64,000 nucleotides of DNA, from positions 62,001 through 126,000 of IMG/VR virus record IMGVR_UViG_3300028840_001395, one strand, 5' to 3'. Position numbers and translations under genes: made by a program. The notes beneath the pieces are model-generated. The model was not told the DNA's origin and searched no databases. It saw only the letters and a list, made by a program, of their open reading frames with translations. Of the stretch, positions 1 to 22,841 are shown piece after piece; position 1 is the first letter of the stretch, and the number at the start of each line of letters is the position of its first letter.

Positions 1-1540
1 CCACGGGAACCTGCTGGTGATACTTCTGGATGGTCTTGGCCTCGTTGACCACCTTCCGGCCCAGGTAGGCCTTGAGCTTGCCCCCGGCGACGGACTTGGG
101 GGTCTCCGCGCCCTTCTTGATCTTGTCGCCTAGATTCTTCCCGGCCTCGTAGGGGGGACGCTTGAGGCCGGACTCGGAACCATCGAAGCTGAGGCCCATC
201 AGCGCGGAGTTGAGGATGTCGAAGGGCTCGATGGGCACGCTGTAGGTTCTGGCGGTCGCCTTGATCGCCATCTCCAGGATGCCATACATCCCCGAGTACT
301 TCTTGTCGAACCACTCCGGCTGGACAGAGAAGCCGTTGTCCGCGAACCAGGCCCGTGCCTGGTCGAGTCCACGCTGGCCCTTGTCGAACCAGGTGCCCAC
401 CTTGACTCCGGCAGCCCCTTCGAGCACCTGGGCGCGGAGCATCTTGTCGTAATCGTCCGCCATCGAGGCCAGAATCCAGCGTGCGGCGACTCGGAAACGG
501 GCATCCTTGATGCTGGCTGCCCTGAGCAGCTTGAGCACGGTTCTCGCGGTCTTGATGTTCATTTCACACCTATCCGATCTTGATGCCTTACGTCGGCGGA
601 ACTTCTTGGAAAAGAGTATCTCGGGGTCAGGCCTCTGTTGGAACCAGGGGAGCCCTTCCATCTCGTATCGCTTCTGGAGCTGTGCCTGGAGACTCTGATT
701 GGCCCAAAGGGCGTCGAACACCCTTCGCCAAGCCCTTGGCCAGTACTTCTGGCTCAAGTCCTGTGGGAGGACTCCGGCTCGTTGAGCGACTTCCTTCTTC
801 GGGGGGATACGCTTCTCGGTCTCCACGATGTCGAGCCAGGTGTTCATCACCTCTTCGGTGCGGCCCGTGCCCGCCCAGGTTTTCCTCATGAAGTCGCGGA
901 TCTTCCTGCCCAGTGAATCTTGAGGTTGTCTGAAGATGATCTCCAAGAGGAAATCTCCGGCTTCCTCATCGCTGGCTGGCACAGGGGCGTCGTAGTCTTC
1001 AGGCAGGGATTCAAACTTCTTCTGTCGATTGGCCTCGGTGTATATCCCTCTTACCATGTAGCCCTGAAGGTCACGGTTGGCGGCCACGTTTGGACTCATC
1101 CTTCCAGAGAGGATAGCCTCAGCCTGATTCTTCCCGGCCTCGAAGACGGGACGCGACTTCTTCAGCTTCTCCGGGTCGATGATGCTCAGACCCATGAGGT
1201 AGTCGTGGATGACCTCGTAGGGGTCGAGCGACAAGTTGAGCCTCTTGAGTGCCCGCTGGATCTCCTTCATCACGATGTTGTAGACCACGGTGGAATCCAT
1301 GTCGAACCAGCGAGGGTCGAGTTCGTATCCTCGGTCGAGGAAGTACTTCTCGGCCTGCTGGAGACCCTTCTTTCCACGCTTCCACCAGGTATCGGGACGG
1401 ACTCCAGCGACCCCTTCAAGCATCTGCGTCCGCATGAAACGGTCGTATTCGGTGGACATCGAGGCCAGAATCACCCGAACACGGGGGTCTGATCTCCCGA
1501 GGAGCTTGATGATCGCTGCCGCTACACGAATATCCATCAT
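1..1540 (-). CDS. Hypothetical protein of two tandem homologous units, running off the left edge; unit 1 ends in an HTH-like segment
   Basis: Absent from the ORF track because no stop is reached. MMDIRVAAAIIKLL... reads in frame into MNIKTARTVLKLL... at 562. The units share ILASM..YD...R.Q.LEG.AGV...TW and LMGLS...P..EAGKN. Confidence 0.7.
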   Translation of the reverse strand, partial: MMDIRVAAAIIKLLGRSDPRVRVILASMSTEYDRFMRTQMLEGVAGVRPDTWWKRGKKGLQQAEKYFLDRGYELDPRWFDMDSTVVYNIVMKEIQRALKRLNLSLDPYEVIHDYLMGLSIIDPEKLKKSRPVFEAGKNQAEAILSGRMSPNVAANRDLQGYMVRGIYTEANRQKKFESLPEDYDAPVPASDEEAGDFLLEIIFRQPQDSLGRKIRDFMRKTWAGTGRTEEVMNTWLDIVETEKRIPPKKEVAQRAGVLPQDLSQKYWPRAWRRVFDALWANQSLQAQLQKRYEMEGLPWFQQRPDPEILFSKKFRRRKASRSDRCEMNIKTARTVLKLLRAASIKDARFRVAARWILASMADDYDKMLRAQVLEGAAGVKVGTWFDKGQRGLDQARAWFADNGFSVQPEWFDKKYSGMYGILEMAIKATARTYSVPIEPFDILNSALMGLSFDGSESGLKRPPYEAGKNLGDKIKKGAETPKSVAGGKLKAYLGRKVVNEAKTIQKYHQQVPV

Positions 1541-1761
1541 CCACCCACACCAGGTTCCTGTCTTTACAGGGATATAGGCGGGCAACCGAAAAAGTTGTCG
1601 CCTCCCCCCGATTTCTTGGTGTCAGAGGTTGACTTGTCAGGGGGGTCTGGTATTGTGGTCTGCAAGCTACGACCCGGACCCGCTGGTCATTAAGCTCAGT
1701 CCTGTCGTGGCCCGATACATAACCGTGGCTCAGGCCAATGGCCCCAGCCCAGGAGGAAGCG

Positions 1762-2910
1762 ATGCCCCAGTCCAGAGATCCCAGTCTCCCCCCTGTTCTG
1801 ACCATCTTCATCGAGCCGTTGCTCAAGGTGCTCGGTCGAAAGGTCAACTTCAAACCCGGCGTGTTCGTCAATCGCAAAGAGGTCATCCACGACGCCATCC
1901 GTGAAGCCGGTTTCGACCCCGACAATCTGGCCCAGTACGGCGACCCCGACAAGGGCTGGAAGTTCAGTGGGCAGAAGCCGATGGGGTTCCAGCGCCGTGT
2001 CTGGTTGGCCCACCGCAAGTGCTATGACCAGGGCAAGGGCTGGCTCCCCAAGGGTCAGGTTCCCCTCACCCTCAAGGGGAAGAAGCGGGGCTACCTGGCG
2101 CTCACCGAGGCGGGAGCCGAGAAGGCCAAGGCCCTCTGCGGAACCACCGAGGACGACACGGGTGGGAGCGGAGGGAACCTCACCGCTGACTTCCTCAACA
2201 AGCGGCTGACCGATACCGGGGGCCTCGACGGCACGCTCTACTCCTTGATGAAGGCGGCGGTCCGGGTCAAGCTCCCCCTGTCCGCGACCATCGGCATCGT
2301 GGACGACCACATCCAGACCTGCTTCATGAAGCTCATCCAGCGGGACGCCCTCCGCGAGCGCATCCTGCGGGGCAAGAACATCACCGACAGTCACCTCGCC
2401 ACCTACGCCGTCCGTAGCGGCTTCACCGACATCCGGCGCGACGGCACGGAGCCCGTGTGCCGGGAGATGTACGGTGCCCAGACGGAGCGGGAGCGGGCCA
2501 AGCTGCGGGAAGAAAGGGCGAGGCGGCAAGAGGAGAACAAGGATCTCTATGAGGCCCGCCCCTCCACCTCCATCGCCTCTGGGCGTCGTGTCACCTGGGA
2601 CAAGGACGACAAGGACTGGAAGACCATCGCGGACGTGGAAGATACCCAGGCCGTGGACGGCGACGAAGCGATGGCGAAGCGGGCCTTCGATGACCTGTGG
2701 GAGCGCATCGAGGTCGTCGTCCGCTACAAGAAGCCCAACGCCTGGAAGCGGTACATGACCATCCTCCGCATGGTCTCGAACGGCTGGTCTGTCAAGGAGA
2801 TCGCCCATGCGGAAGGCGTGTCCCGCAACCGGGCGGCTACGCTGGTGGCTCAGGCCCGGAAGTGTGTCCGTGAGGGTCGGAACTCGGATATGCTGGCGGC
2901 TGTCCTCTAG
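1762..2910 (+). CDS. Sigma70/ECF-like factor with N-terminal Mrr_N-like winged helix
   Basis: C-terminal region-4 HTH (GWSVKEIAHAEGVSRNRAATLVAQARK); region-2-like DDHIQTCFMKL; N-terminal ...RGYLALTEAG; SD AGGAGG. Confidence 0.65.
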   Translation: MPQSRDPSLPPVLTIFIEPLLKVLGRKVNFKPGVFVNRKEVIHDAIREAGFDPDNLAQYGDPDKGWKFSGQKPMGFQRRVWLAHRKCYDQGKGWLPKGQVPLTLKGKKRGYLALTEAGAEKAKALCGTTEDDTGGSGGNLTADFLNKRLTDTGGLDGTLYSLMKAAVRVKLPLSATIGIVDDHIQTCFMKLIQRDALRERILRGKNITDSHLATYAVRSGFTDIRRDGTEPVCREMYGAQTERERAKLREERARRQEENKDLYEARPSTSIASGRRVTWDKDDKDWKTIADVEDTQAVDGDEAMAKRAFDDLWERIEVVVRYKKPNAWKRYMTILRMVSNGWSVKEIAHAEGVSRNRAATLVAQARKCVREGRNSDMLAAVL

Positions 2911-3257
2911 GGAAGATCCAAGAACTCGTCCTCTTCATCTTCGGGCTCTGGCGGAGGATTGGCCGCGAGCATCTCCGCATCCTCCTCGCTCATCACCTGC
3001 ATCTCCCGGCACACCGGGTCAGCGAGAGCCATTCCGGGCATGTCATAGAGCCCGCTGGTGGGGATCTTCTGCCCTGTGGCGACGAACTGCCGGACGAAGA
3101 ACAGGATGATCTGGGCCACGTCGTCGGTGGTGAACCCGTGCGTGGCCATGCTCTGGGTGAATCCGACCGTGTTGGCGTTGATGCCCTTGGATCGCAGCGG
3201 CTGCCCCGCGAGCTGCTGGATGTAGGCTTCCCACTCTTCCAACGTCTGCAAGACCAT
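2907..3257 (-). CDS. Hypothetical protein
   Basis: Coupled to the helicase stop, acidic C-terminus. Confidence 0.7.
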   Translation of the reverse strand: MVLQTLEEWEAYIQQLAGQPLRSKGINANTVGFTQSMATHGFTTDDVAQIILFFVRQFVATGQKIPTSGLYDMPGMALADPVCREMQVMSEEDAEMLAANPPPEPEDEEDEFLDLP

Positions 3258-6200
3258 CAGGCTTCTCCGGACTTGCCCACGAAGGGCGACATCATCAGCT
3301 CCGCCACCTTGTCATCCAGGTCAGCCAGGGACGCATCCCGCTGAACCATCTCGGCCCACTTGCCCCCAAGCTCGGTCTTCATGGACTCGATCATGATGTC
3401 GTCAAAGACCTTCTTCCCGACCGCCTGCTGCGCCGCCTTGATCTGGTCGAGCGTCAGGTCGTGCTCATCACGGGGCTTCCCATCATCGTCGTCCGCCGAG
3501 TAGGTCGCGTCCAGGGTGAACTCATCAACCGGGTTCTTCTGACCCTGCCGCCAGGCTCGGGCCGTCCTCTGCTTCATCGTCTCTGACTGGGCGCTGTCCC
3601 GGTCGAGGTGAATCACCGTGTCGAACATCTGGAGGTTCAACCCGTAGGCGTACTCGGAACCCAACAAGACTACGGCCTTGATACCCTGGTCAGGGCCGAT
3701 GACCTGCTCGAAGGCGAACGACTGCCACATGTCCGGCCTGTAGTACTTGTTGTCCGTCATGTTCCGCCTGACCAGCGGGTGAGGCTTGTACTTCTTCTTC
3801 CGCAGCGGGAGGGGGATGACGGACACTTTGCCGCCCTTGTCGAAGTCAGCCTTGGTGACCGACTTGACGAGCCTGTCCCTCATGGACGGGGTGCGCTCGA
3901 ACACAACCTCCTTGAGAGGCGTCGTGCCCTGGTAGATATAGATCTTGTCCTTCAGGGCCACGGCAACCTTGCCGCCCATCTTCTGTCCGAGGAACTTCAC
4001 CGCGTCCATGCAGAACTCAGGGTCGTCCGCGAACAGCAACGCCCGGCTCGGGTTCGGCCCTCGCTGTGTCTGGGCGAGCTTCTGGGTGACGATCCTCTCG
4101 GCCTCTTGGAGCTTCGGGTTCTCCATCTGACGGGCGACCTCTCGAAGCTCTGCCTCGGTGGCCATCTTCCGCCACTTGGTCACGACTCGGGACAGAATCC
4201 GAGGGATGGGCTCGCCATCCGGCATCCGGTTCGTCCCGACCATCGTGGCGATGGTCTCCAGGGCCTTCTCGGGCCGGTTGGACAGATCTCGCATGAGCTT
4301 GACCACGGGCCGGAACTCCAGGCGGGCGAACCGCTTGACATCCTCTCCGCCCGTCCCGGCTCCGCCACCTTCCGTCCACTTCTTCGCCAGGCCGAACATG
4401 GTCTTGGAGAACTGCCTGGTGAGCGTCTGGTAGGCGTTCTGCACCGTAGGATCCATCTCGATGGCGACAGGGGTTCGGGTCGGCTTGTCCAGAACCTTCC
4501 CCTCGGGGTCAACCACATCGGACTTCTCGGCGTAGAACACGTTGCGCTTGACCCACTGATCAAGCTCACGCTTCAAGGAGGGATCCTCCTTGACCCCGAC
4601 CACATCGCCGCCCACGGTCTCGCAGTACCGCTTCTTGAAACGGCGCTTCACGGCCTGGGCTTCGCGGACAGCCTGGGTCTGGGCCGCGTTGTCACCTGGG
4701 AGGCTGAACGTCCGGATGTTGTTGGACACGGCAGCCAGGATGTAGGCTTCCATCGGCTCCTTGTCCATCGGGCTGGCCGTGAAACAGACCTTGCGGGGGT
4801 GCCAGAGCTTGAGAGCAGCCTTGGACGCCTGGTTGGTGCCCTTGAGCTGATGGGCCTCATCGAAGTAGATGGAGATGTAGAACTTGGCGTCGAACCTGTA
4901 GCCTCTGTCCTTCCAGAACTGCTGCTTCCGCAGACGGGAGTTCTTCGGGATCCTTCCGTGCTTCTGGGCTCTCCCGAACTCCTTGTAGTCCATGATGTCC
5001 ACCCGCTCACGCAGGGCTGCGGGGTCTGACATGAACTTCACGGCCTGCGAGGGCAGGTTGCCCTTGAGATGCCTCGGGCAGACGTAGAGGAAGCGCCCGT
5101 TGGTCTCGATCTCCTCACCATCCGGGGTCGTGTAGGAGGCACCCTCCTCGGCCATCCCGTCCCGGAGCAGCTTCTGCATCGCCGCGATGGCGGTCAGAGT
5201 CTTGCCGATTCCGGTGTCGAGCGCACAGACGCCCGAGCCACCGTTGGCATCGAGCCACGCCAACGCCTGCTTCTGCTTGTCGATGAGCTTGGTACGTGGA
5301 CGGAATCCACCAATAGCCTCCGCCGTGTAGTGCGGGAGGTTCTCCTCGGTGGTGGCCCTATCGGAGTAGGCCTGCTCCTGGGTGTACTTCTGCATCATCT
5401 CCATCGCGGACTGGGAGAGCGACATGCCCGCGAGGTTGTCCATGATGGTGGCGTAGTCCTTGGGGTCGAAGTAGAACTCTGCCGCCCGGCTACCGGGAAC
5501 CTTGTGGTAGGAGATGCTCTGGATGCAGTTACCCTTGGGGCTCGGCACGTTGCAGGCCAAGGCCTTGATCGCATCCCGGATTTCCTTGTCCGTGTTCCTC
5601 CCCGAGATACGCATGAACAGCTTCTTCGTCTTCTTCTTGACCCGCTTGCCCTTGATCACCATCGTCTCGGTCATGTCCGCGACCGTGGTGTAGGGCTCAC
5701 GCTGGGCCGGGTCGATGCGCTTGGGAGCCTTCCCCTTGCGGCCCGAGATCGGGCTGTAGGTGTAGGCCGTACCCTCGATCATCCGACCGAGGCCATTCAC
5801 CATGTCATCGAGGAAGATGCCCTTGTAGCGACCACCGACGATGACCTTGACCCCCTCATAGCGGAGAACGTCCCCTTCCTCATCCAGAATGGGCACCTGG
5901 GTCACCTTCGTCGGGAACACGCGGGTCAGCTTGCCCTGCTTGGCCAGGTCATCCGTCAGGGCGTCCCACTGCACATCACCGTCGAGGGCGTCCACTTCGC
6001 CCTCGGTGAGCATCCGCATCTTCTTGAGCGGAACCTCTGTTCTGGTCGAGATCAGTGCGAGCCTGGTGCGAGCCTTGTCCTTGCCCCGCATGTGCTGGCT
6101 GTACTGCTGCTCCGCTGTGCCGTCCCAGTTCCACTTTTCCTTGCCGGTCTCGGGGTTGATGACCCGGACAGGGGGTGGGCCTCGGAACTCGGTTCCGTCA

Positions 6201-6898
6201 CGGGCCAGGATGACGTGTTCCTTGGTCTTGGGGTCGATGCCGACGAGGATGGGCTTTCCAGCGAGGGGCTTGCGCTCGATCACGAGGCCCTGGGCCTTCA
6301 TGTGAGCTTCGATGTTCTCATCGATCTCTGCGAGGGTCTTCTTGCGCTTCACCGTCAGGGCGTAGGACTCGGGATCGGTGTCCCGCATCTTCTCCCGGCG
6401 CTGCTGCTTGGGGGACAGAGGGAAGAAGATGGCCCACCGCTCCATCCCCTTCTGCCGGGGCTTGAGGTAGATCTCCTTGTCACGGGCGACCTGGATGAGA
6501 AGCGGGACAAACAGTTCGTTGAGTTGCCGCCAGTGAGTGGGGCTGAGCATCCCCTGCCGGACGAGCCGGGCGAAGTGAATGTTGAGATCAGACCTCAGCT
6601 CTGCGATCTGATTCGTGATGGCCGGGGAGACGTTCTTCCCATCCACGGGACTCGTGATCTGGTTGAGCCGGTTCGTCGCCCTCCTGAACTGCATCCGAAG
6701 ATCGTCAGGGATGGGGTATCCCCGATTGATGGACTTCAACAAACCGTAGAAGTTGAAGAACTCCAGACCCTTCGGGGTAAACGCCTTGCGGAGACGCTGC
6801 ATGATGGGTCGAGAGAATCCCGGCAGGAGCTTGGGCTCGTCCTCATCCCCCTCGGGGGCTCCCAGACGGAGGATGGGCCTATCATGCGGGTAGATCAC
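3257..6898 (-). CDS. SNF2-family (SF2) helicase/ATPase, 1213 aa
   Basis: LDTGIGKT, FDEAHQLK, FTASP, GLNLQ, QRTARAWRQGQ motifs. Confidence 0.9.
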   Translation of the reverse strand: MIYPHDRPILRLGAPEGDEDEPKLLPGFSRPIMQRLRKAFTPKGLEFFNFYGLLKSINRGYPIPDDLRMQFRRATNRLNQITSPVDGKNVSPAITNQIAELRSDLNIHFARLVRQGMLSPTHWRQLNELFVPLLIQVARDKEIYLKPRQKGMERWAIFFPLSPKQQRREKMRDTDPESYALTVKRKKTLAEIDENIEAHMKAQGLVIERKPLAGKPILVGIDPKTKEHVILARDGTEFRGPPPVRVINPETGKEKWNWDGTAEQQYSQHMRGKDKARTRLALISTRTEVPLKKMRMLTEGEVDALDGDVQWDALTDDLAKQGKLTRVFPTKVTQVPILDEEGDVLRYEGVKVIVGGRYKGIFLDDMVNGLGRMIEGTAYTYSPISGRKGKAPKRIDPAQREPYTTVADMTETMVIKGKRVKKKTKKLFMRISGRNTDKEIRDAIKALACNVPSPKGNCIQSISYHKVPGSRAAEFYFDPKDYATIMDNLAGMSLSQSAMEMMQKYTQEQAYSDRATTEENLPHYTAEAIGGFRPRTKLIDKQKQALAWLDANGGSGVCALDTGIGKTLTAIAAMQKLLRDGMAEEGASYTTPDGEEIETNGRFLYVCPRHLKGNLPSQAVKFMSDPAALRERVDIMDYKEFGRAQKHGRIPKNSRLRKQQFWKDRGYRFDAKFYISIYFDEAHQLKGTNQASKAALKLWHPRKVCFTASPMDKEPMEAYILAAVSNNIRTFSLPGDNAAQTQAVREAQAVKRRFKKRYCETVGGDVVGVKEDPSLKRELDQWVKRNVFYAEKSDVVDPEGKVLDKPTRTPVAIEMDPTVQNAYQTLTRQFSKTMFGLAKKWTEGGGAGTGGEDVKRFARLEFRPVVKLMRDLSNRPEKALETIATMVGTNRMPDGEPIPRILSRVVTKWRKMATEAELREVARQMENPKLQEAERIVTQKLAQTQRGPNPSRALLFADDPEFCMDAVKFLGQKMGGKVAVALKDKIYIYQGTTPLKEVVFERTPSMRDRLVKSVTKADFDKGGKVSVIPLPLRKKKYKPHPLVRRNMTDNKYYRPDMWQSFAFEQVIGPDQGIKAVVLLGSEYAYGLNLQMFDTVIHLDRDSAQSETMKQRTARAWRQGQKNPVDEFTLDATYSADDDDGKPRDEHDLTLDQIKAAQQAVGKKVFDDIMIESMKTELGGKWAEMVQRDASLADLDDKVAELMMSPFVGKSGEA

Positions 6899-14141: not shown

Positions 14142-14146
14142 CCGGT

Positions 14147-14635: not shown

Positions 14636-16239
14636 CGGATCACCCTCATCCGCTTGAGAGCCCGCATGTCGTGCTTCTGCCACGCCTTGTCGATGGCCTG
14701 GGACTCCTTGCGGTGATCCCACGCAATCTGGCGGAGCGACTCGATGGCCTCCTTGATAGTCCGACCGATCTCACCCATGTAGCGGTCGTCGGAGTCCTCG
14801 GAGGCCATCACCTTCTGGATGTACTGTATCTCACGTCGGGAGAGAACCTGATGGCTGGCCAGCGTCCGCAGATCCCACTTCTTCCAGGCTTTCTCGATCT
14901 CGTCGGCCATCTCGTCGTTCTCGACAGCCTCGCTGTTGTGGAACTGGATGGCCTGCTGAATCTTCTCCGCCTCGTAGGACGGAATGGGCTCGACCCGAAG
15001 GGCCATTCTGCCAGAGGCCAGCCTGACCACGGCGACCTGGGTGTTCCGCTTGAACCGGATGTTGACCGCCGAGAACCCGGCCCGCATGGCGTCCGCCTTG
15101 TTGATGGGCTTGCCGTCCCACCGGGAGGTGATGTCCTGAAGGATGAAGTCCTTGCCCGCCTCCCAGTCCGCGATGGCCTTGGCCTTGGAGGTGTAGTCCC
15201 GTCCGTAGGCCGGAGTCACGACGATGTGCTTGGCCTGAAGGTAACGGGCAGCAACCCGCGTGGCATGGCCGTGGACTCTCTTCCCGCCCTTGGCATTCTG
15301 ACCCTTGGTGGTGATCTTCATGGCTCCATTCCGCATGATCTTGATGAGACCCATCTTGGCCAGTTCGATGAGGAGGGGGTTCTTCGGGCTGTACTCGCCC
15401 AGGCGGTGGCTCCTGAAGTACTCCTTACGGTAGCCGCTCTTGATTCCACTGATGATGGCCAGGGCCGTCTTCTGATCCTCGGTGATGTCGTCCTCATCTC
15501 CGGCCCCCAGGAGCTTCGTCAGGTTGTCCGGATGAGCCTTGATGGTCGCGTAGGTGGGCTGACCCCCTCCCACGACACCACTGATGACCACGTTGTTCGG
15601 TGGAATGGGTCGGGGCTTCGTGTCCAGGTCAACGGGGTTGTCGGGGTTGAACATGTTGGCCCCACCCCAAGACCCCCACTCGACCTGGTATCGGCCCGTC
15701 CCCAGGTTCACAGCGATGGTGAATCCTTGCCGACCTGCCCCCGAGAGGGAGGACATCTGGTAGGTGCGGGACTCTACGACCATGATGTTCTTGCGACCGT
15801 ATTTGACCTCCCGGAGTGCCTTCTGGATGGGGGCCGGAAGCTCGCGTACATCCACGTAGACTTCCTTGCGGGCCTTCTTCAGATGACGGACAGCGACCCG
15901 AGCAGCAGCCTTCCGCTTCTCGTGACGCCAGGCGGTGCCCTCCACCTTGTCGCAGAGAGAGGCGCAGAAAGCTCCGGGATCGACCCCCTTGCCTTCCATC
16001 TCCTTGATGCACTTGGTCACCTTGTGCTTCACGTCCCCGGTCATCGAGTCCCAGAACTTCTTGACCGACTCGTCTGTCCAGCCCTTCGGGAGCTTCCCCT
16101 CCCACTTGGCCGCTTCCTTGTAGCTCTGGGTCAGGAAATTCCGCACTTCGGGCTCCTGCCGGGCCAGCTTCAGGAAGGCCATGTCGGTCGCAGAGCGAAG
16201 GTTGAAGAACCCAACTGGGGGGAGAATCCATCTAGCCAT
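14632..16239 (-). CDS. Modular hypothetical protein (two RVAAR-type motifs)
   Basis: Long ORF, phage-like codon use. Confidence 0.75.
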   Translation of the reverse strand: MARWILPPVGFFNLRSATDMAFLKLARQEPEVRNFLTQSYKEAAKWEGKLPKGWTDESVKKFWDSMTGDVKHKVTKCIKEMEGKGVDPGAFCASLCDKVEGTAWRHEKRKAAARVAVRHLKKARKEVYVDVRELPAPIQKALREVKYGRKNIMVVESRTYQMSSLSGAGRQGFTIAVNLGTGRYQVEWGSWGGANMFNPDNPVDLDTKPRPIPPNNVVISGVVGGGQPTYATIKAHPDNLTKLLGAGDEDDITEDQKTALAIISGIKSGYRKEYFRSHRLGEYSPKNPLLIELAKMGLIKIMRNGAMKITTKGQNAKGGKRVHGHATRVAARYLQAKHIVVTPAYGRDYTSKAKAIADWEAGKDFILQDITSRWDGKPINKADAMRAGFSAVNIRFKRNTQVAVVRLASGRMALRVEPIPSYEAEKIQQAIQFHNSEAVENDEMADEIEKAWKKWDLRTLASHQVLSRREIQYIQKVMASEDSDDRYMGEIGRTIKEAIESLRQIAWDHRKESQAIDKAWQKHDMRALKRMRVIR

Positions 16240-16374
16240 TGGATTTTCCTTGTCTTTTCTCCCTGACACGCGCCCTCCCGTGCGGGTGGCGTTCATTGAA
16301 TCTTCTATGAGGGGTCTATAATAGGGAAATCACCGGGTAGAGTGGAGCCATGAGCTGCATCACCCAGAAGCGGA

Positions 16375-16653
16375 GTGACGACAATGACCTATGAGAAGCT
16401 GGTGACTCAACTGTCGGAGATGACGGGTCAGCCCGAGGAGGCTGTCCGGAATATCCTCTTTGCGCTGCCTGATGCCCTCATCAAGATGGATGAGAAGGAC
16501 GTGGTTCGGACTCCGATGGGGGTGTTCCGTATGACCAAGCGGGCCTCGCGGAAGATCAAGCCGCCCAAGGGCGATCAGGTGGTCACGGTGCCGGAGGAGA
16601 TGGTCGTGAAGTTGCGGGCCGGAAAGCGGCTGCGGAAGCCGGTGGAGGGCTAG
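16375..16653 (+). CDS. HU/IHF-family DNA-binding protein
   Basis: MGVFRMTKRASRKIKPP...VVKLRAGKRLRK. Confidence 0.8.
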   Translation: MTTMTYEKLVTQLSEMTGQPEEAVRNILFALPDALIKMDEKDVVRTPMGVFRMTKRASRKIKPPKGDQVVTVPEEMVVKLRAGKRLRKPVEG

Positions 16654-16901: not shown

Positions 16902-16977
16902 ACTACGGGCCTCCTCCACCCCCATGATACACCATCTTGCGGTCGGGTAAACCCCCCACCGCAAGGGCTGGGCAGAG

Positions 16978-17376
16978 TCAGACCTGCTGGGCGAGCATCT
17001 GGAGGATCTCCTTGGCAATGGAATCCCCCATTTTTAGGGCGGAGTTGGACAGAACCGTCTGGATGGCCAGACTCAGGTCAGACTCCATCTTGGCCTTCCC
17101 CTTGTCGTCTGACTCCTTGTATTTCTTGAGGAAACCCTTGTCCTTGGACATCTCGACCAGGGTGCCTGTGTAGGCTTCCCGGCGGAGGGCCTCGGTCAGG
17201 AAGGCGTAGGCCAACTGGCGGGCTCCCCCTCCGGGCCAGTGAAAAGTCTTCTGTTCGTCCGCCGGACTTCGGAACTGATGCACCGACCAGACCTGGCCAT
17301 TCTCATCTTGATGGACACGGATTTCGAGTGCCGCCGTGTTCGGGCCGTCCTTCCAAAGTTCTTCAGGGGCTTCCAT
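16978..17376 (-). CDS. Hypothetical protein
   Basis: Follows groEL. Confidence 0.7.
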   Translation of the reverse strand: MEAPEELWKDGPNTAALEIRVHQDENGQVWSVHQFRSPADEQKTFHWPGGGARQLAYAFLTEALRREAYTGTLVEMSKDKGFLKKYKESDDKGKAKMESDLSLAIQTVLSNSALKMGDSIAKEILQMLAQQV

Positions 17377-18973
17377 CAGACCTCCGAGCGACAGAAGCCT
17401 CGACCGTCAGGAGGGTCGAGGCCACCGACACCGCCGTCTCGATGACCGTCACCACCACATCCGCAGGGTCAATCACGGGCGGCTCATCACTCATGTTGCG
17501 GAACTTCAGGGCCTTGGCATCCCAGCCCTCCCAGCTTTCAAGCTCGCCATCTTCCAGAACCTTGCGGACGATGTAGGCCCCGTTCTCCCCGGCGTTCTCC
17601 GCCAGATACTCCAGGGGCTTCGTGAGAGCCTCGACCACGATGTTGGAACCCGCCTCCATCTCGTCCACGCAGTAGGCCATCTTCTCCCTGTCGGCCAAGA
17701 CCGCCAACCCAGCACGGAGGTAGGCGATACCCCCGCCGGGCACCACACCACCGTTCAGAGCCGCCTGGACGGAGCCCAACGCATCCTCGACCCGAGCCCG
17801 GCGCTCCTTGAGAGCAGCCTCGGTAGTCCCACCGACACGGAGAATGGCGATGCCTCCCGCCAGCTTGGAGATGCGCTCCTTGAGCCTGTCGGCATCGTAG
17901 TCCGAAGCACAGGACGCCTGCTCCGCCTTGAGCCACTCCATGCGCTCCTTGATACCCTCCTGAGCCTCGGGATACGCCTCGAAGAGGGTCGTCCGGGCCT
18001 TGATCGTCGCCTTCCGCACCGACCCGAACCACTCCTGCTGCCACTTGGTATGGTCGAGCCCGATCTCCTTGGACACGTAGGTTGCCCCCGAGAGGGCAGC
18101 GATGTCCTTGAGTTGCTCTGACTTGTGAGGCCCGAAGCCCGGAGCCTTGATGGCGCAGCACTGGACTACGCCCTGGTTGTGGTTGATCGCCATGACGGAA
18201 AGGGCCGGGCCTTCGACCTCCTGGGCTATCACGAGAAGCTCGTTCTTCTCGAAGCCCCCGGCGATCTCCATCATCTCCTTGATGTCGTCCAGGCTCACGA
18301 GCTTGGCGTCGATCACCGCGACCAGCGCCCCCTCGATGACCCGCTCCAGCTTCTCACCCGAGGCGAACACCGGACTGACGTAGCCTTGGTCGATCTCCAT
18401 CCCCTCCTTGAACTCCAGGATGGTCTCGACACCGTGGCTGTCCTCGATGGACAGCGTGCCGTCCTTCCCCACTGCCATGCAGCCCTCGGCCATGTTCTCG
18501 GCAATCTCTTCGTCGCCGTTGCTGGCGATGAGGGCGACCTGGTGGAGATCCTCCTTGGTCTCGACCGGGACGGAGAAGTCCCTGATGAAGCTGGTGGCGA
18601 TATCACGGACATCCCGCATCCCCTTGACCAGGTTCACGGGCGACATCCCTGCCGTGATGCGCTTGTGCCCCTCTCGGAGAAGCTCCGCCGTGAGGATGGC
18701 GGCGGAGGTCGTCCCGTCACCCACCTCATCATTGACCCGGACACAGGCTCCCTTCAAGAGCTGACAGCCCTGGTTCTCCAGGGGGTCTTCCAGGTCAAGC
18801 TCTCGGGCGACGGTCACGCCATCCTTGGTCGCCAGGAGGCCCATCGCCCTGTCCAGGATCGCGGTTCGTCCCGCAGGGCCATAGGTTCCAGAAACGGTCT
18901 TGGCGAGCTTCAGAGCACCGTCGAGGATCTTCTCTCGGGCGGCCAGGCCAATTTCGATCTCACGTCCGTCCAT
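17363..18973 (-). CDS. groEL: GroEL-like chaperonin
   Basis: TYGPAGR, TKDGVTVA, GDGTTS, GVVPGGG. Confidence 0.95.
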   Translation of the reverse strand: MDGREIEIGLAAREKILDGALKLAKTVSGTYGPAGRTAILDRAMGLLATKDGVTVARELDLEDPLENQGCQLLKGACVRVNDEVGDGTTSAAILTAELLREGHKRITAGMSPVNLVKGMRDVRDIATSFIRDFSVPVETKEDLHQVALIASNGDEEIAENMAEGCMAVGKDGTLSIEDSHGVETILEFKEGMEIDQGYVSPVFASGEKLERVIEGALVAVIDAKLVSLDDIKEMMEIAGGFEKNELLVIAQEVEGPALSVMAINHNQGVVQCCAIKAPGFGPHKSEQLKDIAALSGATYVSKEIGLDHTKWQQEWFGSVRKATIKARTTLFEAYPEAQEGIKERMEWLKAEQASCASDYDADRLKERISKLAGGIAILRVGGTTEAALKERRARVEDALGSVQAALNGGVVPGGGIAYLRAGLAVLADREKMAYCVDEMEAGSNIVVEALTKPLEYLAENAGENGAYIVRKVLEDGELESWEGWDAKALKFRNMSDEPPVIDPADVVVTVIETAVSVASTLLTVEASVARRSDGSP

Positions 18974-19024
18974 CGGTCACTCCCATGCGCGAGGTGTACT
19001 CGGCTATCATACCCGCACGGGAGT

Positions 19025-21982
19025 CTACTTGATCTTCCTCTTCCCTGTATATCCCAGCGCCTTGCGGAACTCCTTGACGGCCTTGACCCACTTGGCCCGC
19101 GTGGTGGGGATGCGCTTCAACTCGTAGAAGAAGCGAGTGTTGTCCATGATGCCCCGGTAGAGGGTCTTGTCCTTGTCGGACTTCGCGGCAACTCCTGTAA
19201 AGAAATCAATGGCTTTGTTCTTCTGGGCCTTGGTCTTCAGCTCCGAGATCTGCCCCTTGAACTCATCGACGGCATCATCGAGTCGGGTGTAGAACTCGAT
19301 GTCATCCATCGCGTGGAAGTCGAAGTCCTTGGGATTCTGCTTCACCACCCGGCCATGCCCGAAGTCCCGGTCACCGAACCCCTGCTCCCTCAGCTCCCTG
19401 AGTGCGTGCTGCAATTTGGGGTCATCCTCACGGAAGCCCTGGCTCCTGGGATTCATCCATTGCTGATACTGGGGTGTCCGCAGCTTCTTCGGAGGCAGAC
19501 CCGCCTTGCCACCCACTGCATCGGAGAGGAAGCTCTGGGCGAAATGCTGGCTCTCATGCCGGACGATTCTCCGAAGCTGGTTGCGGCTCCAGTCGTAGAT
19601 GCTGTTGGGCAGCGTGATCTTCATCGTCCTGATGATGTCCGCCCAGGTCGCCAAGGCCCCGGGGATCTCATCAGTGGTCAGGATGACTCTGACCTTCTGG
19701 AAGGGGGTGATTGGCTTGCCCGCCTTGAGGGCCTTGACCTCGGCCCGGAGATCCTTGAGTTCTTGGATCTCGATCTTCCTGAGCTTGGCCAGGCCAGGAT
19801 CTAGCTTCTCACCCCGAGCCTTGAGGGCCTTGATCTTCTTCTCGTCGTCCTTGTTCCACTGCTCCCGCATCTTCAGCCGCTTCTCTGCTCCGGCCAGATA
19901 CTTCTTGATGCGGCCCTGGTCGGCCAGGATGCCCTCGTACTTCCAGCCCTTCAGGAGCGGGGCCACCTCAAACTCCCGCTCCACGTTGCCGGGGGTGGCC
20001 TTCTTGTACTCGGACACCTGGAACTTCTTGAGGTGGGCCTTCTCCTTCTCCAGACGCTCGTTCTCCCCAGCCCCCCACATCTGCTGGGCGTTGACCCGTT
20101 CCTCGATGCCCTTGAACATGCGATCCATCGTGGCGGCGAGCTTGCCCTCACGGTAGAGCTTGTAGAAGTCCCGCGACTTGATGCCGGGTCGCCCGGGGAC
20201 ACCCACGGCTGTCCAGGCGAACTGGCTGGTCACCAGATGCACGATGCTGTTCTTGCCCTTCTGGCCCGCGTACATCTCCCAGAGGGCCTTGGGCTTGGTC
20301 TTCGCTCGGAGGGCCTTGCGGAACGCGGTGAAGGCCTTCTTGATCTTCTGGCCTTCCTTCTTCTTCTCGATGTCCAACTGGCGGTTGTATTCCATGCTCT
20401 TGTCGATGTCCGCCATGATCTTCGTGGCAGCTACCGACAAGGCCCACTTGGAGATCTCTTCGACCATCAAGGGCGGGGCTTCCAGGCGACCCGACGTGCG
20501 CTGGCTTGTCGCTCCAATCCACCTGGCGGCGACCCGGACAGCCACATCCTCATCTTCCAGGTCATCGAGGATGTCCTGCAACGAAGCCGTCTTGCCCAGC
20601 GCCTTCTGCACGAAGGTCTGGGGGTCGAATAGCAGCTTGGTCTTGCCGCCCAGGATGGCCTTCTCCAACGTGTCGGCCACTCCGCCTTGGCTCAGGAAGC
20701 GCAAGATGATCTCGGGGTTCACGTAGGAGCGGATGGTCGTCGCCACATCCTCGTGGCTCAACGCCTCCTGGGCCTTGTGGTAGGCCGCGTCGAGCGTCGC
20801 TGCGATCTCCTGGGCGACCCGTTCGGCCAGGTCGTCACCCTGCTTCTTGGAGAAGCCCTTGATTCTGGCGTAGAGTTCGGCCTGAGCTTCGCGCAGGTTG
20901 TCGAGGACGGTCTCGGTCGCCTTGAGCTTGCGGAAGTCGGTCGGGGAGAAGTCCCCGAGCTGCTCCCGAAAGTACCGCTGCAGGTCGGTGTAGGTGAACT
21001 GCTGACCCTTGGAGGTCGTGAAGATGAACTTCGACCCGCCCTTCTTCGCCTTCTCCACGTAGTCCTTGAGGATCTTGACGATGGAGGCGTCCGAGAGGTT
21101 GGCGACGTTGGTGCCGCCCTTCTTTCCGAGGAACTCCATCGTGACGAAGTTGTTTCGGACGAACTTGACGTGCTTGGGGCCGAGGGTGATGGCCCCGAAG
21201 GTCTCGATCTCGACCTCCTTGCCGTCCTGAATCTTGACGACCTTGTTGCCCTCCTTGCCGGGCCGGATGCCAGTCTCCATGATGATGGCGGTGATGAGGG
21301 CAGCCATCTGGGTCAGTTCATCGCTGCTCTTGAGGTCTTTCTTCACCTGGCGGGCGATCTTGTTGTAGTGCTTGATGAGCTTGTGCATTTTCTGGATCTT
21401 CTTCGCCAGCGTCAGATGCTCGTTCTCGAAGCGGTCGGTGACCTTGGAGATCACCCCGCTCTCGTCCACCTCAACCACGATGTTCTTCGGCAGGAACGCC
21501 CGGATGTCCTCGGGCACGACCTCCCGCAAGGGGGCCTGACTCTCCGCGATGGCGATGGCCTCAAAGCCCTTGTCGGCCTGCTTGCCGACCTCGACCAGCA
21601 CCTTCTTGAGCGGGAACTTGTTGGGGTAGCAGAGCCGGTTCCTCGCCTGATACAAGACCTGGGAGCGCCACGACTTCGCCTTGGGATTCTGTGCCTCTGA
21701 CCCTATCCAGGTGTTCAGGTAGTTCTCGACCTGGGGGAGCACCTTGATCATCTTGATGAAGACCCGTCCCCTGCGGGAGAGGCTCACCTTGTCCTTGCCG
21801 GGCTGGGCGGCGTTGGCCTGGTCAGCGTAGGGCTGCAGCTCCTTCAGGAGCGCCTTGAAGGCATTGAGAGCGCCCTTGATGTGCTTCTCACGGGCCTTGA
21901 TGTCCGCCTGCCAGGCCCGGCTCTCGGGCGTAGGACGCCGAGCACAGACCCAACGGGCAGCTACTCGGGAGGCCGTGGTCAT
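19025..21982 (-). CDS. Type IB topoisomerase fused to a C-terminal zincin-like (HExxH) domain
   Basis: TGIRPGKE, FLGKKG, DFRKLKAT, LSH..ATTIRSYVNP; VRHESQH. Confidence 0.8.
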   Translation of the reverse strand: MTTASRVAARWVCARRPTPESRAWQADIKAREKHIKGALNAFKALLKELQPYADQANAAQPGKDKVSLSRRGRVFIKMIKVLPQVENYLNTWIGSEAQNPKAKSWRSQVLYQARNRLCYPNKFPLKKVLVEVGKQADKGFEAIAIAESQAPLREVVPEDIRAFLPKNIVVEVDESGVISKVTDRFENEHLTLAKKIQKMHKLIKHYNKIARQVKKDLKSSDELTQMAALITAIIMETGIRPGKEGNKVVKIQDGKEVEIETFGAITLGPKHVKFVRNNFVTMEFLGKKGGTNVANLSDASIVKILKDYVEKAKKGGSKFIFTTSKGQQFTYTDLQRYFREQLGDFSPTDFRKLKATETVLDNLREAQAELYARIKGFSKKQGDDLAERVAQEIAATLDAAYHKAQEALSHEDVATTIRSYVNPEIILRFLSQGGVADTLEKAILGGKTKLLFDPQTFVQKALGKTASLQDILDDLEDEDVAVRVAARWIGATSQRTSGRLEAPPLMVEEISKWALSVAATKIMADIDKSMEYNRQLDIEKKKEGQKIKKAFTAFRKALRAKTKPKALWEMYAGQKGKNSIVHLVTSQFAWTAVGVPGRPGIKSRDFYKLYREGKLAATMDRMFKGIEERVNAQQMWGAGENERLEKEKAHLKKFQVSEYKKATPGNVEREFEVAPLLKGWKYEGILADQGRIKKYLAGAEKRLKMREQWNKDDEKKIKALKARGEKLDPGLAKLRKIEIQELKDLRAEVKALKAGKPITPFQKVRVILTTDEIPGALATWADIIRTMKITLPNSIYDWSRNQLRRIVRHESQHFAQSFLSDAVGGKAGLPPKKLRTPQYQQWMNPRSQGFREDDPKLQHALRELREQGFGDRDFGHGRVVKQNPKDFDFHAMDDIEFYTRLDDAVDEFKGQISELKTKAQKNKAIDFFTGVAAKSDKDKTLYRGIMDNTRFFYELKRIPTTRAKWVKAVKEFRKALGYTGKRKIK

Positions 21983-22575
21983 CCCAGCCTGCGGAGCCAG
22001 CGGGCAGCGACCCTCGTTGCCACGACCTTGCGCCACTTCGACCAGCCCTCGTCAGCCAACCCTTGCACATCTTCTTCGGTGCAGACCACCTCATGGGGGG
22101 TCGCCCGGACAGGATGGGCCACGAAAGACTTGTCGAGGCCCTCCACGAAGCGAGCGATCTTCTTGATGTTGTGGAGGTTGTCCTCCCAGACATGGACGGT
22201 ATCGATCTGGGGATGCTTGGCCAGGATACCAGATACCACGGCCACCTTGTAGCCGCCCGTCGAGTCCCCGGGGTTCAGATAGACCTCATCGAAGTTGAGT
22301 CCCGCCTGCTTGAGCAGTTCACCGACACGCAGGCGGTGGGCGCTCTGAAGAGGGCGACCTGTGCAGAGGATGGCCCAGGTGTCCCGGTCGCTGATGCTCT
22401 GCTTGGCTGCCTGGACGGTCTTGCCGATCCACCAGTCGCGGCCCGGCTTGAGGGGAACGCAGGGAGGCCCCAGTGACTCGGGGGCCATGATCCAAGAGTC
22501 CTTGCCCCACCAGTCGGGGCGCTGTGGCGACCGGAAGAGAGTGCCGTCGAAGTCGTAGAGGTGGAGTTCGGCCAT
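21979..22575 (-). CDS. HAD-family phosphatase (Swiss-Army-Knife RNA-repair-like HAD)
   Basis: YDFDGTLFRSP, LCTGR, VWEDN. Confidence 0.75.
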   Translation of the reverse strand: MAELHLYDFDGTLFRSPQRPDWWGKDSWIMAPESLGPPCVPLKPGRDWWIGKTVQAAKQSISDRDTWAILCTGRPLQSAHRLRVGELLKQAGLNFDEVYLNPGDSTGGYKVAVVSGILAKHPQIDTVHVWEDNLHNIKKIARFVEGLDKSFVAHPVRATPHEVVCTEEDVQGLADEGWSKWRKVVATRVAARWLRRLG

Positions 22576-22841
22576 CAGATCTTCATCCGCTTGAGCTTGG
22601 CGATCTGCGGCCCCAGAATCTTGCCGACCTGGCGCATGACGCTGGCGGACTCTGCCACGTCGGGATGTCCATCGGCCAGGCCCGGAGTGCGGCCCTTGGG
22701 TGCCCAGTGGATGAGGACTTCCTCGATGTCATCGAGGGCCTTGTCGAGCTTCTTGACGCCCCAGTCGAGTTCCTTCTGGGCTTCGGTTGCCCCCTGGCGC
22801 TGAAGATGGCGGGCGGCGACTTTCTTGGCGAGGGCATCCAT
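22575..22841 (-). CDS. Hypothetical protein (KKVAARHL N-terminus)
   Basis: SD GGAGG. Confidence 0.7.
   Translation of the reverse strand: MDALAKKVAARHLQRQGATEAQKELDWGVKKLDKALDDIEEVLIHWAPKGRTPGLADGHPDVAESASVMRQVGKILGPQIAKLKRMKI

What the first reader, a model, noticed from the sequence alone, without database searches (positions are those of the whole stretch)
1..22841. Shared RVAAR(W/Y/H) peptide tag and K-x-A junctions across a 23-kb block of unrelated proteins
Seen: at least ten copies of the tag in otherwise unrelated minus-strand ORFs. They are RFRVAARWI (~480), KTAADRIAARYL (~11630), KTSAVRVASHW (~14085), KTSAVRVASRW (~14465), HATRVAARYL (~15250), KAAARVAVRHL (~15895), VAVRVAARWI (~20530), MTTASRVAARWV (~21965), ATRVAARWL (~22005) and LAKKVAARHL (~22815). 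They sit at termini or between domains, and domains often start right after KTA, KQA, KEA or RTA. Established: large phages such as T4 and phiKZ package internal head proteins that the prohead protease cleaves at short motifs. Inference: this is a portable capsid-loading tag plus cleavage site, marking an injected enzyme kit (topoisomerase IB, HAD phosphatase, C39 peptidase, DUF4240).
Basis: partly seen in the sequence, partly recalled or inferred. Interest (0 to 1): 0.8.

Follow-up and report, generated by a model that had tools for sequence, protein, structure and literature searches.

The report
Portable docking peptide in a huge phage
A 13-residue basic helix (A-x-R-V-A-A-R-W/Y-L) is attached to the ends or domain junctions of about twenty unrelated enzymes in this 436-kb phage and its relatives, which marks it as a portable address label, most likely for loading proteins into the capsid, though its receptor is still unknown.

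Summary
The codons beneath them vary synonymously, so selection acts on the peptide. RVAAR[WYH] occurs 9 times in the called proteome against 0.03 in shuffles.

The window belongs to a complete 435,804-bp phage with terminal repeats. The genome holds about 27 copies in about 20 proteins. The consensus is [S/M]-A-x-R-V-A-[A/S]-R-[W/Y/F/H]-[L/I/V]-x-[R/K/A].

Across this phage and its relatives the motif is strongly terminal: 33 of 106 copies lie within 10 residues of a C-terminus, against 4.8 expected. At least one "internal" copy is the N-terminal tag of a fused module. Orthologues in related huge phages keep the tag, while one close relative (G001) has almost none.

The largest carrier is a 2,493-aa multi-enzyme "polyvalent" protein encoded between the portal and prohead-protease genes. 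No receptor was found and the complex prediction gave no answer. The K-x-A "cleavage junction" is not supported.

I found no published description. I rate it a new variant of a known kind (capsid-targeting or cargo-loading peptides).

The parts
464..502 (-). Tag copy (ARFRVAARWILAS) at aa 365 of a 710-aa protein that runs off the left end of the window (genome 61453-63585). It is the N-terminal tag of the second of two tandemly duplicated ~330-aa modules.
1..1585 (-). The part of the 710-aa gene that lies in the window. It is a duplicated module family whose single-copy homologues in relatives carry the tag at their N-terminus.
3257..6898 (-). 1213-aa SNF2-type helicase protein in the block. 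It carries no tag.
7345..11592 (-). 1415-aa protein with a DUF2958 domain. It carries no tag.
11589..12566 (-). 325-aa C39-type cysteine peptidase. Q14, C20, H103 and D120 are invariant in 80 homologues, and the fold matches the PCAT1, LahT and ComA peptidase domains. A variable middle region follows, then a C-terminal tag.
11604..11642 (-). Tag copy (AADRIAARYLGRK), ending 4 residues before the C-terminus of the C39 peptidase. 47 of the 120 best homologues carry the tag, mostly at the extreme C-terminus.
12567..14288 (-). DUF4240 protein (573 aa from the longest start). Its tag lies just upstream of the DUF4240 domain (aa 82-176). A possible true start at ATG 14114 would make the tag N-terminal.
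14058..14096 (-). Tag copy (SAVRVASHWISAA).
14147..14722 (-). 191-aa ORF between the DUF4240 and 554-aa genes. Residues 31-83 have homologues in relatives, and the tag lies at aa 86. The sequence around the tag is nearly identical in DNA to the copy at 14087, so the two are a paralogous pair.
14438..14476 (-). Tag copy (SAVRVASRWADSR).
14632..16296 (-). 554-aa protein without a Pfam match. It has two internal tags (aa 133 and 347). Relatives align to only one module at a time.
15229..15267 (-). Tag copy (HATRVAARYLQAK).
15871..15909 (-). Tag copy (AAARVAVRHLKKA).
19025..22036 (-). Topoisomerase IB protein (Pfam domain at aa 212-404 of the 1003-aa reading). The likely start is ATG 21982, which overlaps the upstream stop codon as ATGA. 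It has tags at the N-terminus and at aa 501.
20507..20545 (-). Tag copy (VAVRVAARWIGAT) between the topoisomerase half and the uncharacterised C-terminal half.
21938..21976 (-). Tag copy (TASRVAARWVCAR) at the N-terminus of the topoisomerase IB protein (MTTASRVAARWV).
21979..22575 (-). 198-aa HAD_SAK_1 (RNA-repair type phosphatase) protein with a C-terminal tag. The orthologue in relative G002 keeps a C-terminal tag.
21985..22023 (-). Tag copy (VATRVAARWLRRL), ending 1 residue before the C-terminus of the HAD protein.
22575..22841 (-). Small protein of about 88 aa (ATG at 22841, with GGAGG 7 nt upstream) that carries an N-terminal tag.
22794..22832 (-). Tag copy (LAKKVAARHLQRQ) at residues 4-16 of the small protein.
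17363..18973 (-). GroEL-type chaperonin encoded inside the block. It carries no tag.

Best explanation
The motif is a portable short linear motif of about 13 residues, [S/M]-A-x-R-V-A-[A/S]-R-[W/Y/F/H]-[L/I/V]-x-[R/K/A]. As a helix it would put A, V, A, W/Y and L on one face and the arginines on the neighbouring face.

It works as an address label. Placed at either end of a protein or in a linker, it docks the carrier onto one conserved phage-encoded partner. The most likely destination is the inside of the assembling prohead (scaffold core, capsid inner surface or portal). The tagged enzymes would then be packaged and delivered with the DNA. The carriers include RNA-repair enzymes, two topoisomerases IB, GNAT, and C39 and WLM peptidases.

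Shown:
- The motif is real, is selected at the protein level and is strongly enriched.
- It is terminal or junctional and is carried by unrelated folds.
- It is kept in orthologues and lost as a unit in one relative.
- The largest carrier lies between the portal and prohead-protease genes.

Inferred:
- That it is a helix that docks.
- That its partner is a head component.
- That the carriers are packaged and injected.
For: 1. Enrichment and protein-level selection.
2. Terminal bias across the clade. Of 106 unique copies, 33 lie within 10 aa of a C-terminus (4.8 expected) and 27 within 25 aa of the first possible start (11.3 expected). Another 20 have an ATG within 12 codons upstream.
3. The tags fall between Pfam domains, never inside one. 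In the 2493-aa protein the layout is 2H (128-234), tag 270, PolyA_pol (304-454), tag 1437, topoisomerase IB (1468-1671), GNAT (1753-1836), tag 1910.
4. The internal tag of the 710-aa protein is the N-terminal tag of a duplicated module.
5. Head-module context. The gene order is TerL, portal, 323-aa tagged protein, 2493-aa tagged polyvalent protein, p259, p199 (tag-like), prohead protease, acidic EF-hand p543, p230, MCP (major capsid protein). This order is syntenic in G001, G002 and G005.
6. The domain repertoire (metallopeptidase, GNAT, Pol-beta nucleotidyltransferase, 2H) matches the polyvalent proteins that Iyer et al. 2017 argue are packaged and injected and that lie next to virion genes (PMC5512222).
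7. The tag is conserved in orthologues at 40-60% identity: HAD at the C-terminus, p166 at the N-terminus, p210 at both ends. It is also found in 47 of 120 C39 homologues.
8. The tag is absent from MCP, portal, TerL, clamp, clamp loader, UvsX, GroEL and SNF2.
9. The AF2 model of the C39 protein places the tag as a terminal helix (308-321) after the folded domains.
Against: - There is no direct evidence of packaging.
- The only complex prediction (MCP + C39 domain + prohead protease + 27-aa tag) scored 0.00, and the tool itself reports that as no answer.
- Most tagged genes in the window lie more than 40 kb from the head genes, beside tRNA arrays, GroEL and HU.
- Relative G001 keeps the polyvalent protein between portal and protease but lacks the tags at the orthologous linker positions. 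If that protein is packaged there, packaging does not need the tag.
- The SNF2 and DUF2958 giants, which are typical injected-type proteins, carry no tag.
- No conserved cleavage site accompanies the tag.
- No cultured tag-bearing relative with virion proteomics was found.
Confidence: 0.4

Rival explanations
1. The tag is a leader-like recognition helix for the clade's conserved C39 peptidase. The C39 enzyme would bind the amphipathic helix, as bacteriocin double-glycine peptidases bind their leader peptides. It would then process or tether the tagged proteins, including polyprotein junctions.
For: - The C39 domain is as conserved as the portal: 60-79% identity in 40 viral contigs, against 62-70% for the portal.
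- Its Q/C/H/D catalytic set is invariant.
- Its best structural matches are the PCAT1, LahT and ComA peptidase domains, which bind helical leaders (TM 0.74-0.84 normalised to target).
- The tags lie at junctions of multi-domain proteins.
Against: - No Gly-Gly or other conserved cleavage site follows or precedes the tag.
- Many tags end 0-4 residues before the C-terminus, which leaves nothing to release.
- G001 keeps the C39 domain at 75% identity yet has almost no tags.
- The complex prediction that included the C39 domain gave no answer.
Confidence: 0.15
2. The tag docks onto a non-virion hub or compartment. It would recruit enzymes to an intracellular phage structure such as a replication or RNA-repair factory, a compartment import system or a chaperone, and not to the capsid.
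For: - Most carriers are nucleic-acid enzymes encoded next to the tRNA arrays and GroEL.
- G001 keeps the head module without the tags.
- A 146-aa protein of unknown fold in the replication region is present in 11 tag-bearing relatives and absent from the tag-poor G001 and LR745208.1.
Against: - Core replication proteins (clamp, clamp loader, UvsX, helicase) carry no tag.
- The p146 correlation has exceptions (G006, G011, G015, G016, G019) and may reflect shared ancestry.
- The largest carrier and several tag-like proteins sit in the head module.
Confidence: 0.2
3. The tag is a nucleic-acid-binding arginine-rich helix. This short basic helix with an aromatic residue would bind a specific RNA or DNA, for example tRNA or the phage genome. 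It would tether the enzymes to their substrate, or let them be packaged together with the DNA.
For: - The tag has arginines at positions 0 and 4, often a basic residue at +8, and an invariant aromatic residue.
- Carriers include RNA-repair domains (2H, CCA-type NTase, HAD_SAK_1, CPD-like) and topoisomerases.
- From my own knowledge: lambda N-type arginine-rich motifs are N-terminal helices with a stacking Trp.
Against: - Only two or three basic residues are conserved.
- The invariant V-A-A/S core points to packing against a protein groove.
- Peptidases (C39, WLM) and small proteins of unknown function also carry it.
- No cognate repeated RNA or DNA element was found.
Confidence: 0.08
4. There is no shared function. 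The motif would be a relic of common ancestry or of recent duplication of a short segment, or a compositional artefact of a GC-rich genome.
For: - Two copies (14087 and 14467) are near-identical in DNA and are a paralogous pair.
- Ala, Arg and Val are common residues in a 62% GC genome.
Against: - Shuffles give 0.03-0.74 expected against 9-20 observed.
- G001, with the same GC content, has 2 hits against 27.
- Synonymous codons vary.
- The tag is also found in relatives at 45-51% GC.
- There is strong terminal bias and conservation in orthologues.
Confidence: 0.02

Closest known systems
Phage T4 capsid targeting sequence (CTS) of internal proteins IPI-III and Alt
   Same: A peptide of about 10 residues is shared by unrelated proteins, directs them into the prohead core and can be moved onto foreign proteins. 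The carriers are enzymes or anti-defence proteins injected with the DNA (own knowledge; discussed in PMC5694885 and PMC5512222).
   Different: - The T4 CTS is strictly N-terminal and is removed by the prohead protease at L/I-x-E.
- Here the tag works at the N-terminus, the C-terminus or a junction, has a different basic sequence, and has no conserved cleavage site beside it.
- No T4-type prohead protease family (PF03420) was detected.
Encapsulin cargo-loading peptides and the HK97 protease C-terminal capsid-targeting tail
   Same: A short terminal peptide docks cargo onto the inner face of an HK97-fold shell. The MCP here is a small HK97-type protein (phrog_2522). The peptidase carries the tag at its extreme C-terminus, as the HK97 protease carries its tail (own knowledge).
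   Different: - Binding to the MCP was not shown.
- The consensus sequence is unrelated.
- Here about 20 different cargoes per genome share one tag.
Polyvalent proteins of phages and conjugative elements (Iyer et al. 2017, PMC5512222), with MuF/gp7 as the head-incorporation domain
   Same: These are giant multi-enzyme proteins (2H, Pol-beta NTase, GNAT, metallopeptidase, SNF2) encoded beside portal and other virion genes and proposed to be injected. The 2493-aa protein here fits that description.
   Different: - No MuF domain was detected by Pfam in the tagged proteins.
- The text searches I ran in that paper did not turn up any shared short peptide.
- Here a short linear motif, not a folded domain, is the common element, and it also marks many single-domain proteins.
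Double-glycine leader peptides recognised by C39 peptidase domains (PCAT1, LahT, ComA)
   Same: An amphipathic helix is recognised by a C39-fold enzyme. A C39-fold enzyme is a conserved core gene of this clade.
   Different: There is no Gly-Gly cleavage site. The tags also occur at C-termini, and there is no ABC transporter context.
P22-type scaffolding protein C-terminal coat-binding helix-loop-helix
   Same: A basic helical element at a protein terminus binds the coat electrostatically (own knowledge). p210, a conserved protein in the head-gene region, carries tags at both ends, next to an acidic stretch.
   Different: p210 is not shown to be a scaffold. The ESM Atlas model of p210 is of low confidence and no family match was found.

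Membership tests
T4-type capsid targeting sequence | N-terminal position only | tested here: not met
   33 of 106 copies are C-terminal and others lie at junctions.
T4-type capsid targeting sequence | Removed by the prohead protease at a conserved site next to the tag | tested here: not met
   No conserved residue lies beyond positions -3 to +9. PF03420 was not found in the genome, although that search matched nothing in the control genomes either.
T4-type capsid targeting sequence | Directs carriers into the prohead | not testable with these tools
   This needs virion proteomics or a tag-reporter packaging assay. The complex prediction gave no answer.
Encapsulin / HK97-type cargo-loading peptide | Terminal peptide shared by different cargo proteins | tested here: met
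   About 20 proteins of unrelated folds carry it at a terminus or junction.
Encapsulin / HK97-type cargo-loading peptide | Binds the inner face of an HK97-fold shell protein | tested here: inconclusive
   The MCP is HK97-type. MCP plus tag in the complex prediction scored 0.00, which the tool reports as no evidence either way.
Polyvalent proteins (Iyer et al. 2017) | Several unrelated effector-type catalytic domains in one polypeptide | tested here: met
   The 2493-aa protein holds 2H, PolyA_pol, topoisomerase IB and GNAT domains. The 1003-aa protein holds topoisomerase IB plus an unknown half.
Polyvalent proteins (Iyer et al. 2017) | Encoded next to virion (late) genes | tested here: met
   This holds for the 2493-aa protein, which lies between portal and prohead protease in 4 of 4 genomes. 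It does not hold for the window block, which lies beside tRNA arrays.
Polyvalent proteins (Iyer et al. 2017) | MuF or other known head-incorporation domain | tested here: not met
   No MuF match appeared in the Pfam scans of the tagged proteins.
Peptidase C39 (double-glycine peptidase) for the 325-aa carrier | Papain-like fold with a Gln/Cys/His/Asp catalytic set | tested here: met
   Pfam PF13529 matches at 1.3e-8. Q14, C20, H103 and D120 are invariant in 80 sequences. Foldseek matches PCAT1, LahT and ComA.
Double-glycine leader peptide (for the tag) | Gly-Gly (or Gly-Ala/Ser) cleavage site at a fixed distance after the helix | tested here: not met
   The column composition after the tag shows no conserved Gly pair, and many tags end the protein.

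The most novel reading that the evidence does not exclude
A large clade of huge phages (hundreds of metagenomic members) uses one universal cargo-loading peptide that works in either orientation, the phage counterpart of the encapsulin loading peptide. A 13-residue helix at either terminus is enough to load any enzyme into the capsid for co-injection. Lineages expand or drop their injected arsenal simply by gaining or losing this peptide. A second, unrelated N-terminal module (L-R-x-K-L-I-R-L-A-x-E-N-P-E-L-R-K-x-L-L-P-L-L-K) may be a parallel address code.
Probability: 0.35. Interest if true: 0.85.

Novelty: new variant of a known kind. Interest (0 to 1): 0.72.

Why it matters
If the tag is a loading signal, the protein set a huge phage injects could be read directly from its sequence. 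That would turn the hypothesis that polyvalent proteins are injected into a testable list. It would also explain how these phages deliver RNA-repair enzymes, topoisomerases and peptidases before any phage gene is expressed. A 13-residue handle would be available for packaging foreign proteins into very large capsids.

Even if the destination is not the capsid, one short linear motif shared by about 20 unrelated proteins per genome is unusual for phages. It is conserved from 45 to 64% GC and lost wholesale in one relative. It therefore points to an undiscovered hub protein.

Tried and rejected
- **Relatives via the topoisomerase IB protein.** This search found nothing in viral contigs or in the phage collection. 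The C39 domain and the portal did find relatives.
- **Complex prediction.** I folded the 27-aa tag with MCP, the C39 domain and the prohead protease, each with its own alignment. The score was 0.00 and the tool states that this is no evidence either way.
- **Phylogenetic profiling for a receptor.** I looked for genes present in tag-rich G002 and G005 but absent from tag-poor G001, which gave six candidates.
  - Only the 146-aa protein tracked the tags at all, and it did so with exceptions.
  - Its AF2 model (pLDDT 81) has no PDB match, and the ESM Atlas returned nothing for it.
- **Family searches.** Pfam and PHROGs gave nothing useful for p210, p107, p710 and most of the other small tagged proteins. 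The Atlas search for p210 gave nothing useful either.
- **Cultured relatives.** Tunturiibacter phage Tunturi_5 (portal 37% identical) and Bacillus phage G are too distant. Tunturi_5 has no tags.
- **Literature.** No paper in the library contains the motif strings. The text searches I ran in the polyvalent-protein and jumbo-phage papers found no such peptide.
- **DNA or RNA element under the motif.** Rejected, because the codons vary.
- **K-x-A junctions.** Rejected as a separate signal.
- **Promoter classes as a proxy for timing.** A 51-copy promoter-like motif is absent from both the head module and the tag block. Its temporal class is unknown, so I draw no timing conclusion.

Full report
**What the window is.** The 64-kb window is bases 62001-126000 of a single 435,804-bp IMG/VR virus record with direct terminal repeats, so it is a complete huge phage. 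The genome is about 62% GC, and 81% of its coding length lies on the minus strand. Right after the block in question the window carries 66 tRNA genes and a tmRNA.

**Checking the observation.** All are on the minus strand and all lie in frames with good coding scores.
- Genome-wide the same pattern gives 21 hits, all on the minus strand, and 19 of them lie in credible ORFs.
- The codons under the motif differ from copy to copy, with six Arg codons, four Val codons and four Ala codons in use. The conserved object is therefore a peptide and not a DNA or RNA element.
- A relative with the same GC content (G001, 402 kb) has 2 hits to a broader pattern, where this genome has 27.
- The strict DNA back-translation of A-x-R-V-A-A-R-W-[LIV] occurs 115 times in all 2.9 million IMG/VR contigs, never twice in one listed stretch. 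It occurs four times in this genome alone.
- The Pfam calls made by eye are right: topoisomerase IB, HAD_SAK_1, Peptidase_C39_2 and DUF4240. The block also holds an SNF2 helicase, DUF2958, GroEL and an HU-like gene.

**Anatomy of the motif.**
- Aligned on the Arg, the conserved stretch runs from -3 to about +9: [S/M/L]-A-x-R-V-A-[A/S]-R-[W/Y/F/H]-[L/I/V]-x-[A/R/K]. If it is helical, A(-2), V1, A2, W5 and L6 form one face, and R0, R4 and the basic +8 form the neighbouring face (inference).
- Scores are bimodal. Tags score 27-34 bits and everything else in the block scores below 5.
- The position-specific score matrix finds further copies elsewhere in the genome, in about 20 proteins in all.
- Carriers outside the window include a WLM-type metallopeptidase, a CPD/2H-like protein, and a 974-aa protein with a weak, sub-threshold SWIM zinc-finger match (E = 0.0056).
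- Another carrier is a 2,493-aa protein with this layout: 2H phosphoesterase, tag, CCA-type nucleotidyltransferase, tag, tag, topoisomerase IB, GNAT, tag.
- The tags never fall inside a Pfam domain.

**Position in the proteins.** I pooled this genome, three fully fetched relatives and 36 partial loci.
- Of 106 unique copies in ORFs of at least 60 aa, 33 lie within 10 residues of the C-terminus (4.8 expected).
- 27 lie within 25 residues of the first possible start (11.3 expected).
- 20 more have an ATG within 12 codons upstream, and 26 are internal.
- In the window, the HAD and C39 proteins are tagged at the C-terminus.
- The small protein that starts at 22841 and the topoisomerase IB protein (start 21982, overlapping the upstream stop as ATGA) are tagged at the N-terminus.
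- At least one internal copy is a former terminus. The 710-aa protein is a tandem duplication of a ~330-aa module whose single-copy homologues in relatives start with the tag. The copy at aa 365 is the N-terminal tag of the second module.

**Relatives.**
- The N-terminal C39 domain of the 325-aa protein finds 584 metagenomic proteins and 40 viral contigs of up to 619 kb, at 57-79% identity.
- The portal is 62-70% identical in the same records, so this is one clade of huge phages. The prohead protease family alone has more than 1,300 members in the database.
- 47 of the 120 best C39 homologues carry the tag. It mostly forms the last residues of the protein, after middle regions of very different length and sequence.
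- The tag is found on the coding strand of many related loci and genomes, at GC contents from 45 to 64%.
- A DNA pattern for the core motif exceeds its reversed control in most large relatives: G008 13 against 2, G007 10 against 1, G009 9 against 1, G033 8 against 0.
- Orthologues keep the tag at the same end: HAD at the C-terminus, p166 at the N-terminus, p210 at both ends.
- G001 has terminal repeats and a portal 69% identical, yet it has almost no tags. At the orthologous linker positions of the giant protein it has unrelated sequence where G000, G002 and G005 have the motif. The tag is therefore gained and lost as a unit.

**Genomic context.**
- The left end of the genome is a classical head module on the minus strand. 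Read in the direction of transcription, it runs: large terminase, portal, a 323-aa tagged protein, the 2,493-aa tagged multi-enzyme protein, p259, p199 (tag-like R-V-A-R-A-F-V-K-K-A), prohead protease, an extremely acidic EF-hand protein (p543), p230 and a 291-aa HK97-type MCP (phrog_2522).
- The order is the same in G001, G002 and G005, with the MCP 87-89% identical.
- A giant multi-enzyme gene placed right after the portal is the arrangement Iyer et al. describe for polyvalent proteins. They argue these are packaged and injected (PMC5512222).
- Two further conserved proteins upstream of the terminase, p210 and p107, carry the tag or a close variant. They retain it, in degenerate form, even in G001.

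**What it most likely does.** The features are those of a docking peptide read by one conserved partner.
- It is short and sharply defined.
- It works in either orientation, sits at termini and linkers, and appears on unrelated folds.
- It is conserved in orthologues and absent from the core replication and structural proteins.

The destination is inferred. The head-module position of the main carrier, the tag-like termini of conserved proteins in the head-gene region, the polyvalent-type enzyme repertoire and the very acidic scaffold-like proteins (p543, p259) beside a basic tag all favour loading into the prohead.

I put this at 0.4 for four reasons. Nothing shows packaging. G001 keeps the giant protein in place without the tags. 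The untagged SNF2 and DUF2958 giants sit in the same block. Most of the tagged genes in the window are far from the head genes.

**Rivals.**
- *Recognition helix for the C39 peptidase.* The enzyme is a conserved core gene with an intact catalytic set, and its fold matches leader-binding peptidases. No cleavage site accompanies the tags, however, and many tags end the protein.
- *Docking onto a non-virion hub or compartment.* This fits the nucleic-acid enzymes and the loss in G001. A 146-aa protein of unknown fold loosely tracks tag-bearing genomes, but with exceptions.
- *A nucleic-acid-binding arginine-rich helix.* This is possible but fits the invariant V-A-A core poorly.
- *Chance or shared ancestry.* This is excluded for practical purposes.

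**K-x-A junctions.** K or R, then T/Q/E/S, then A is only mildly over-represented and precedes a minority of tags. The KT(A/S)A seen in three window copies is part of the variable N-terminal flank, and two of those copies are a recent paralogous pair. I found no evidence for a cleavage site.

**Novelty.** No paper in the searchable library contains the motif strings. The text searches I ran in the two comparative papers most likely to mention it found no such peptide. Capsid-targeting and cargo-loading peptides are known (T4 CTS, the HK97 protease tail, encapsulin loading peptides). If the loading reading is right, this would be a new variant of that kind, because it is clade-wide, works in either orientation and is shared by about 20 cargoes per genome. 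If the partner turns out not to be a head protein, it would be further from anything known.

Noticed in passing
genome 285605-286525(-), 416743(-), 415699(-), 246022(-) (outside the window); G002 183-187 kb; G005 173653, 45883, 276047, 167878, 44278: A second portable N-terminal module of about 27 aa (S-L-R-x-K-L-I-R-L-A-x-E-N-P-E-L-R-K-x-L-L-P-L-L-K) heads otherwise different ORFs. There are 4 copies here, at least 8 in G002, 5 in G005, 10 places in LR745208.1, and 6 each in G011 and G028. It is abundant in LR745208.1, which is poor in the RVAxRY tag.
   Followed up: partly
window 31580, 35977, 36024, 49559, 54704, 61979, 63179 (-) and 36109, 36176 (+); 51 copies genome-wide: A promoter-like motif, cAGAGTAGTCTAGGTG, lies 24-30 nt upstream of start codons, directly before the GGAGG ribosome-binding site. 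It is absent from genome 1-41 kb (head module) and 46-93 kb (the tag block). Its temporal class is unknown.
   Followed up: partly
window 23246-27123 (+), 28688-29048 (+), 46117-60868 (-): Two large tRNA arrays hold 66 predicted tRNAs that cover most anticodons. There is also a tmRNA with the tag peptide ANDEAVLQAA. Two tRNA-like genes have abnormal anticodon loops (52406-52481 and 59821-59907).
   Followed up: no
window 21979-21982: The stop codon of the HAD gene and the likely ATG of the topoisomerase IB gene overlap as ATGA. A C-terminal tag and an N-terminal tag are therefore encoded 47 nt apart in different frames.
   Followed up: yes
window 1-1585 (gene continues to genome 61453): The 710-aa protein is an internal tandem duplication. 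Residues ~36-336 and ~364-685 both align to the same single-copy homologues in relatives.
   Followed up: yes
genome 4704-6335(-) and 8568-9347(-) (outside the window): Two head-module proteins are extremely acidic and share a similar E/D/K-rich tail (…EEEAKDKDEKEGGKKKA…). p543 also has an EF-hand calcium-binding motif (Pfam, 2.6e-9). They are scaffold-core candidates.
   Followed up: partly
relatives G002 142807-146067, G003 and G010 portal genes; protease homologues P0135, P0137, P0142 and others: Portal ORFs of 1103-1172 aa are split into two matching halves. Prohead-protease homologues of about 900 aa carry intein Pfam domains (PF14890, PF05203, PF14528). Inteins therefore appear to interrupt head genes in some members of the clade.
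   Followed up: no
window 11589-12566: The C39 peptidase domain is about as conserved across the clade as the portal (57-79% against 62-70% identity). A gene in an accessory-looking block therefore behaves like a core gene.
   Followed up: partly
genome 51579-52019(-) (outside the window): A 146-aa protein is conserved in 19 of 24 related records searched. Its AF2 model is confident (pLDDT 81: one helix, a beta-hairpin, two long helices) and has no PDB match. It is absent from the tag-poor genomes G001 and LR745208.1.
   Followed up: partly
window 16375-16653 (+): An HU/IHF-type DNA-binding protein gene (Pfam PF00216, 1.6e-9) sits on the opposite strand inside the otherwise minus-strand tag block, next to the phage GroEL.
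   Followed up: no
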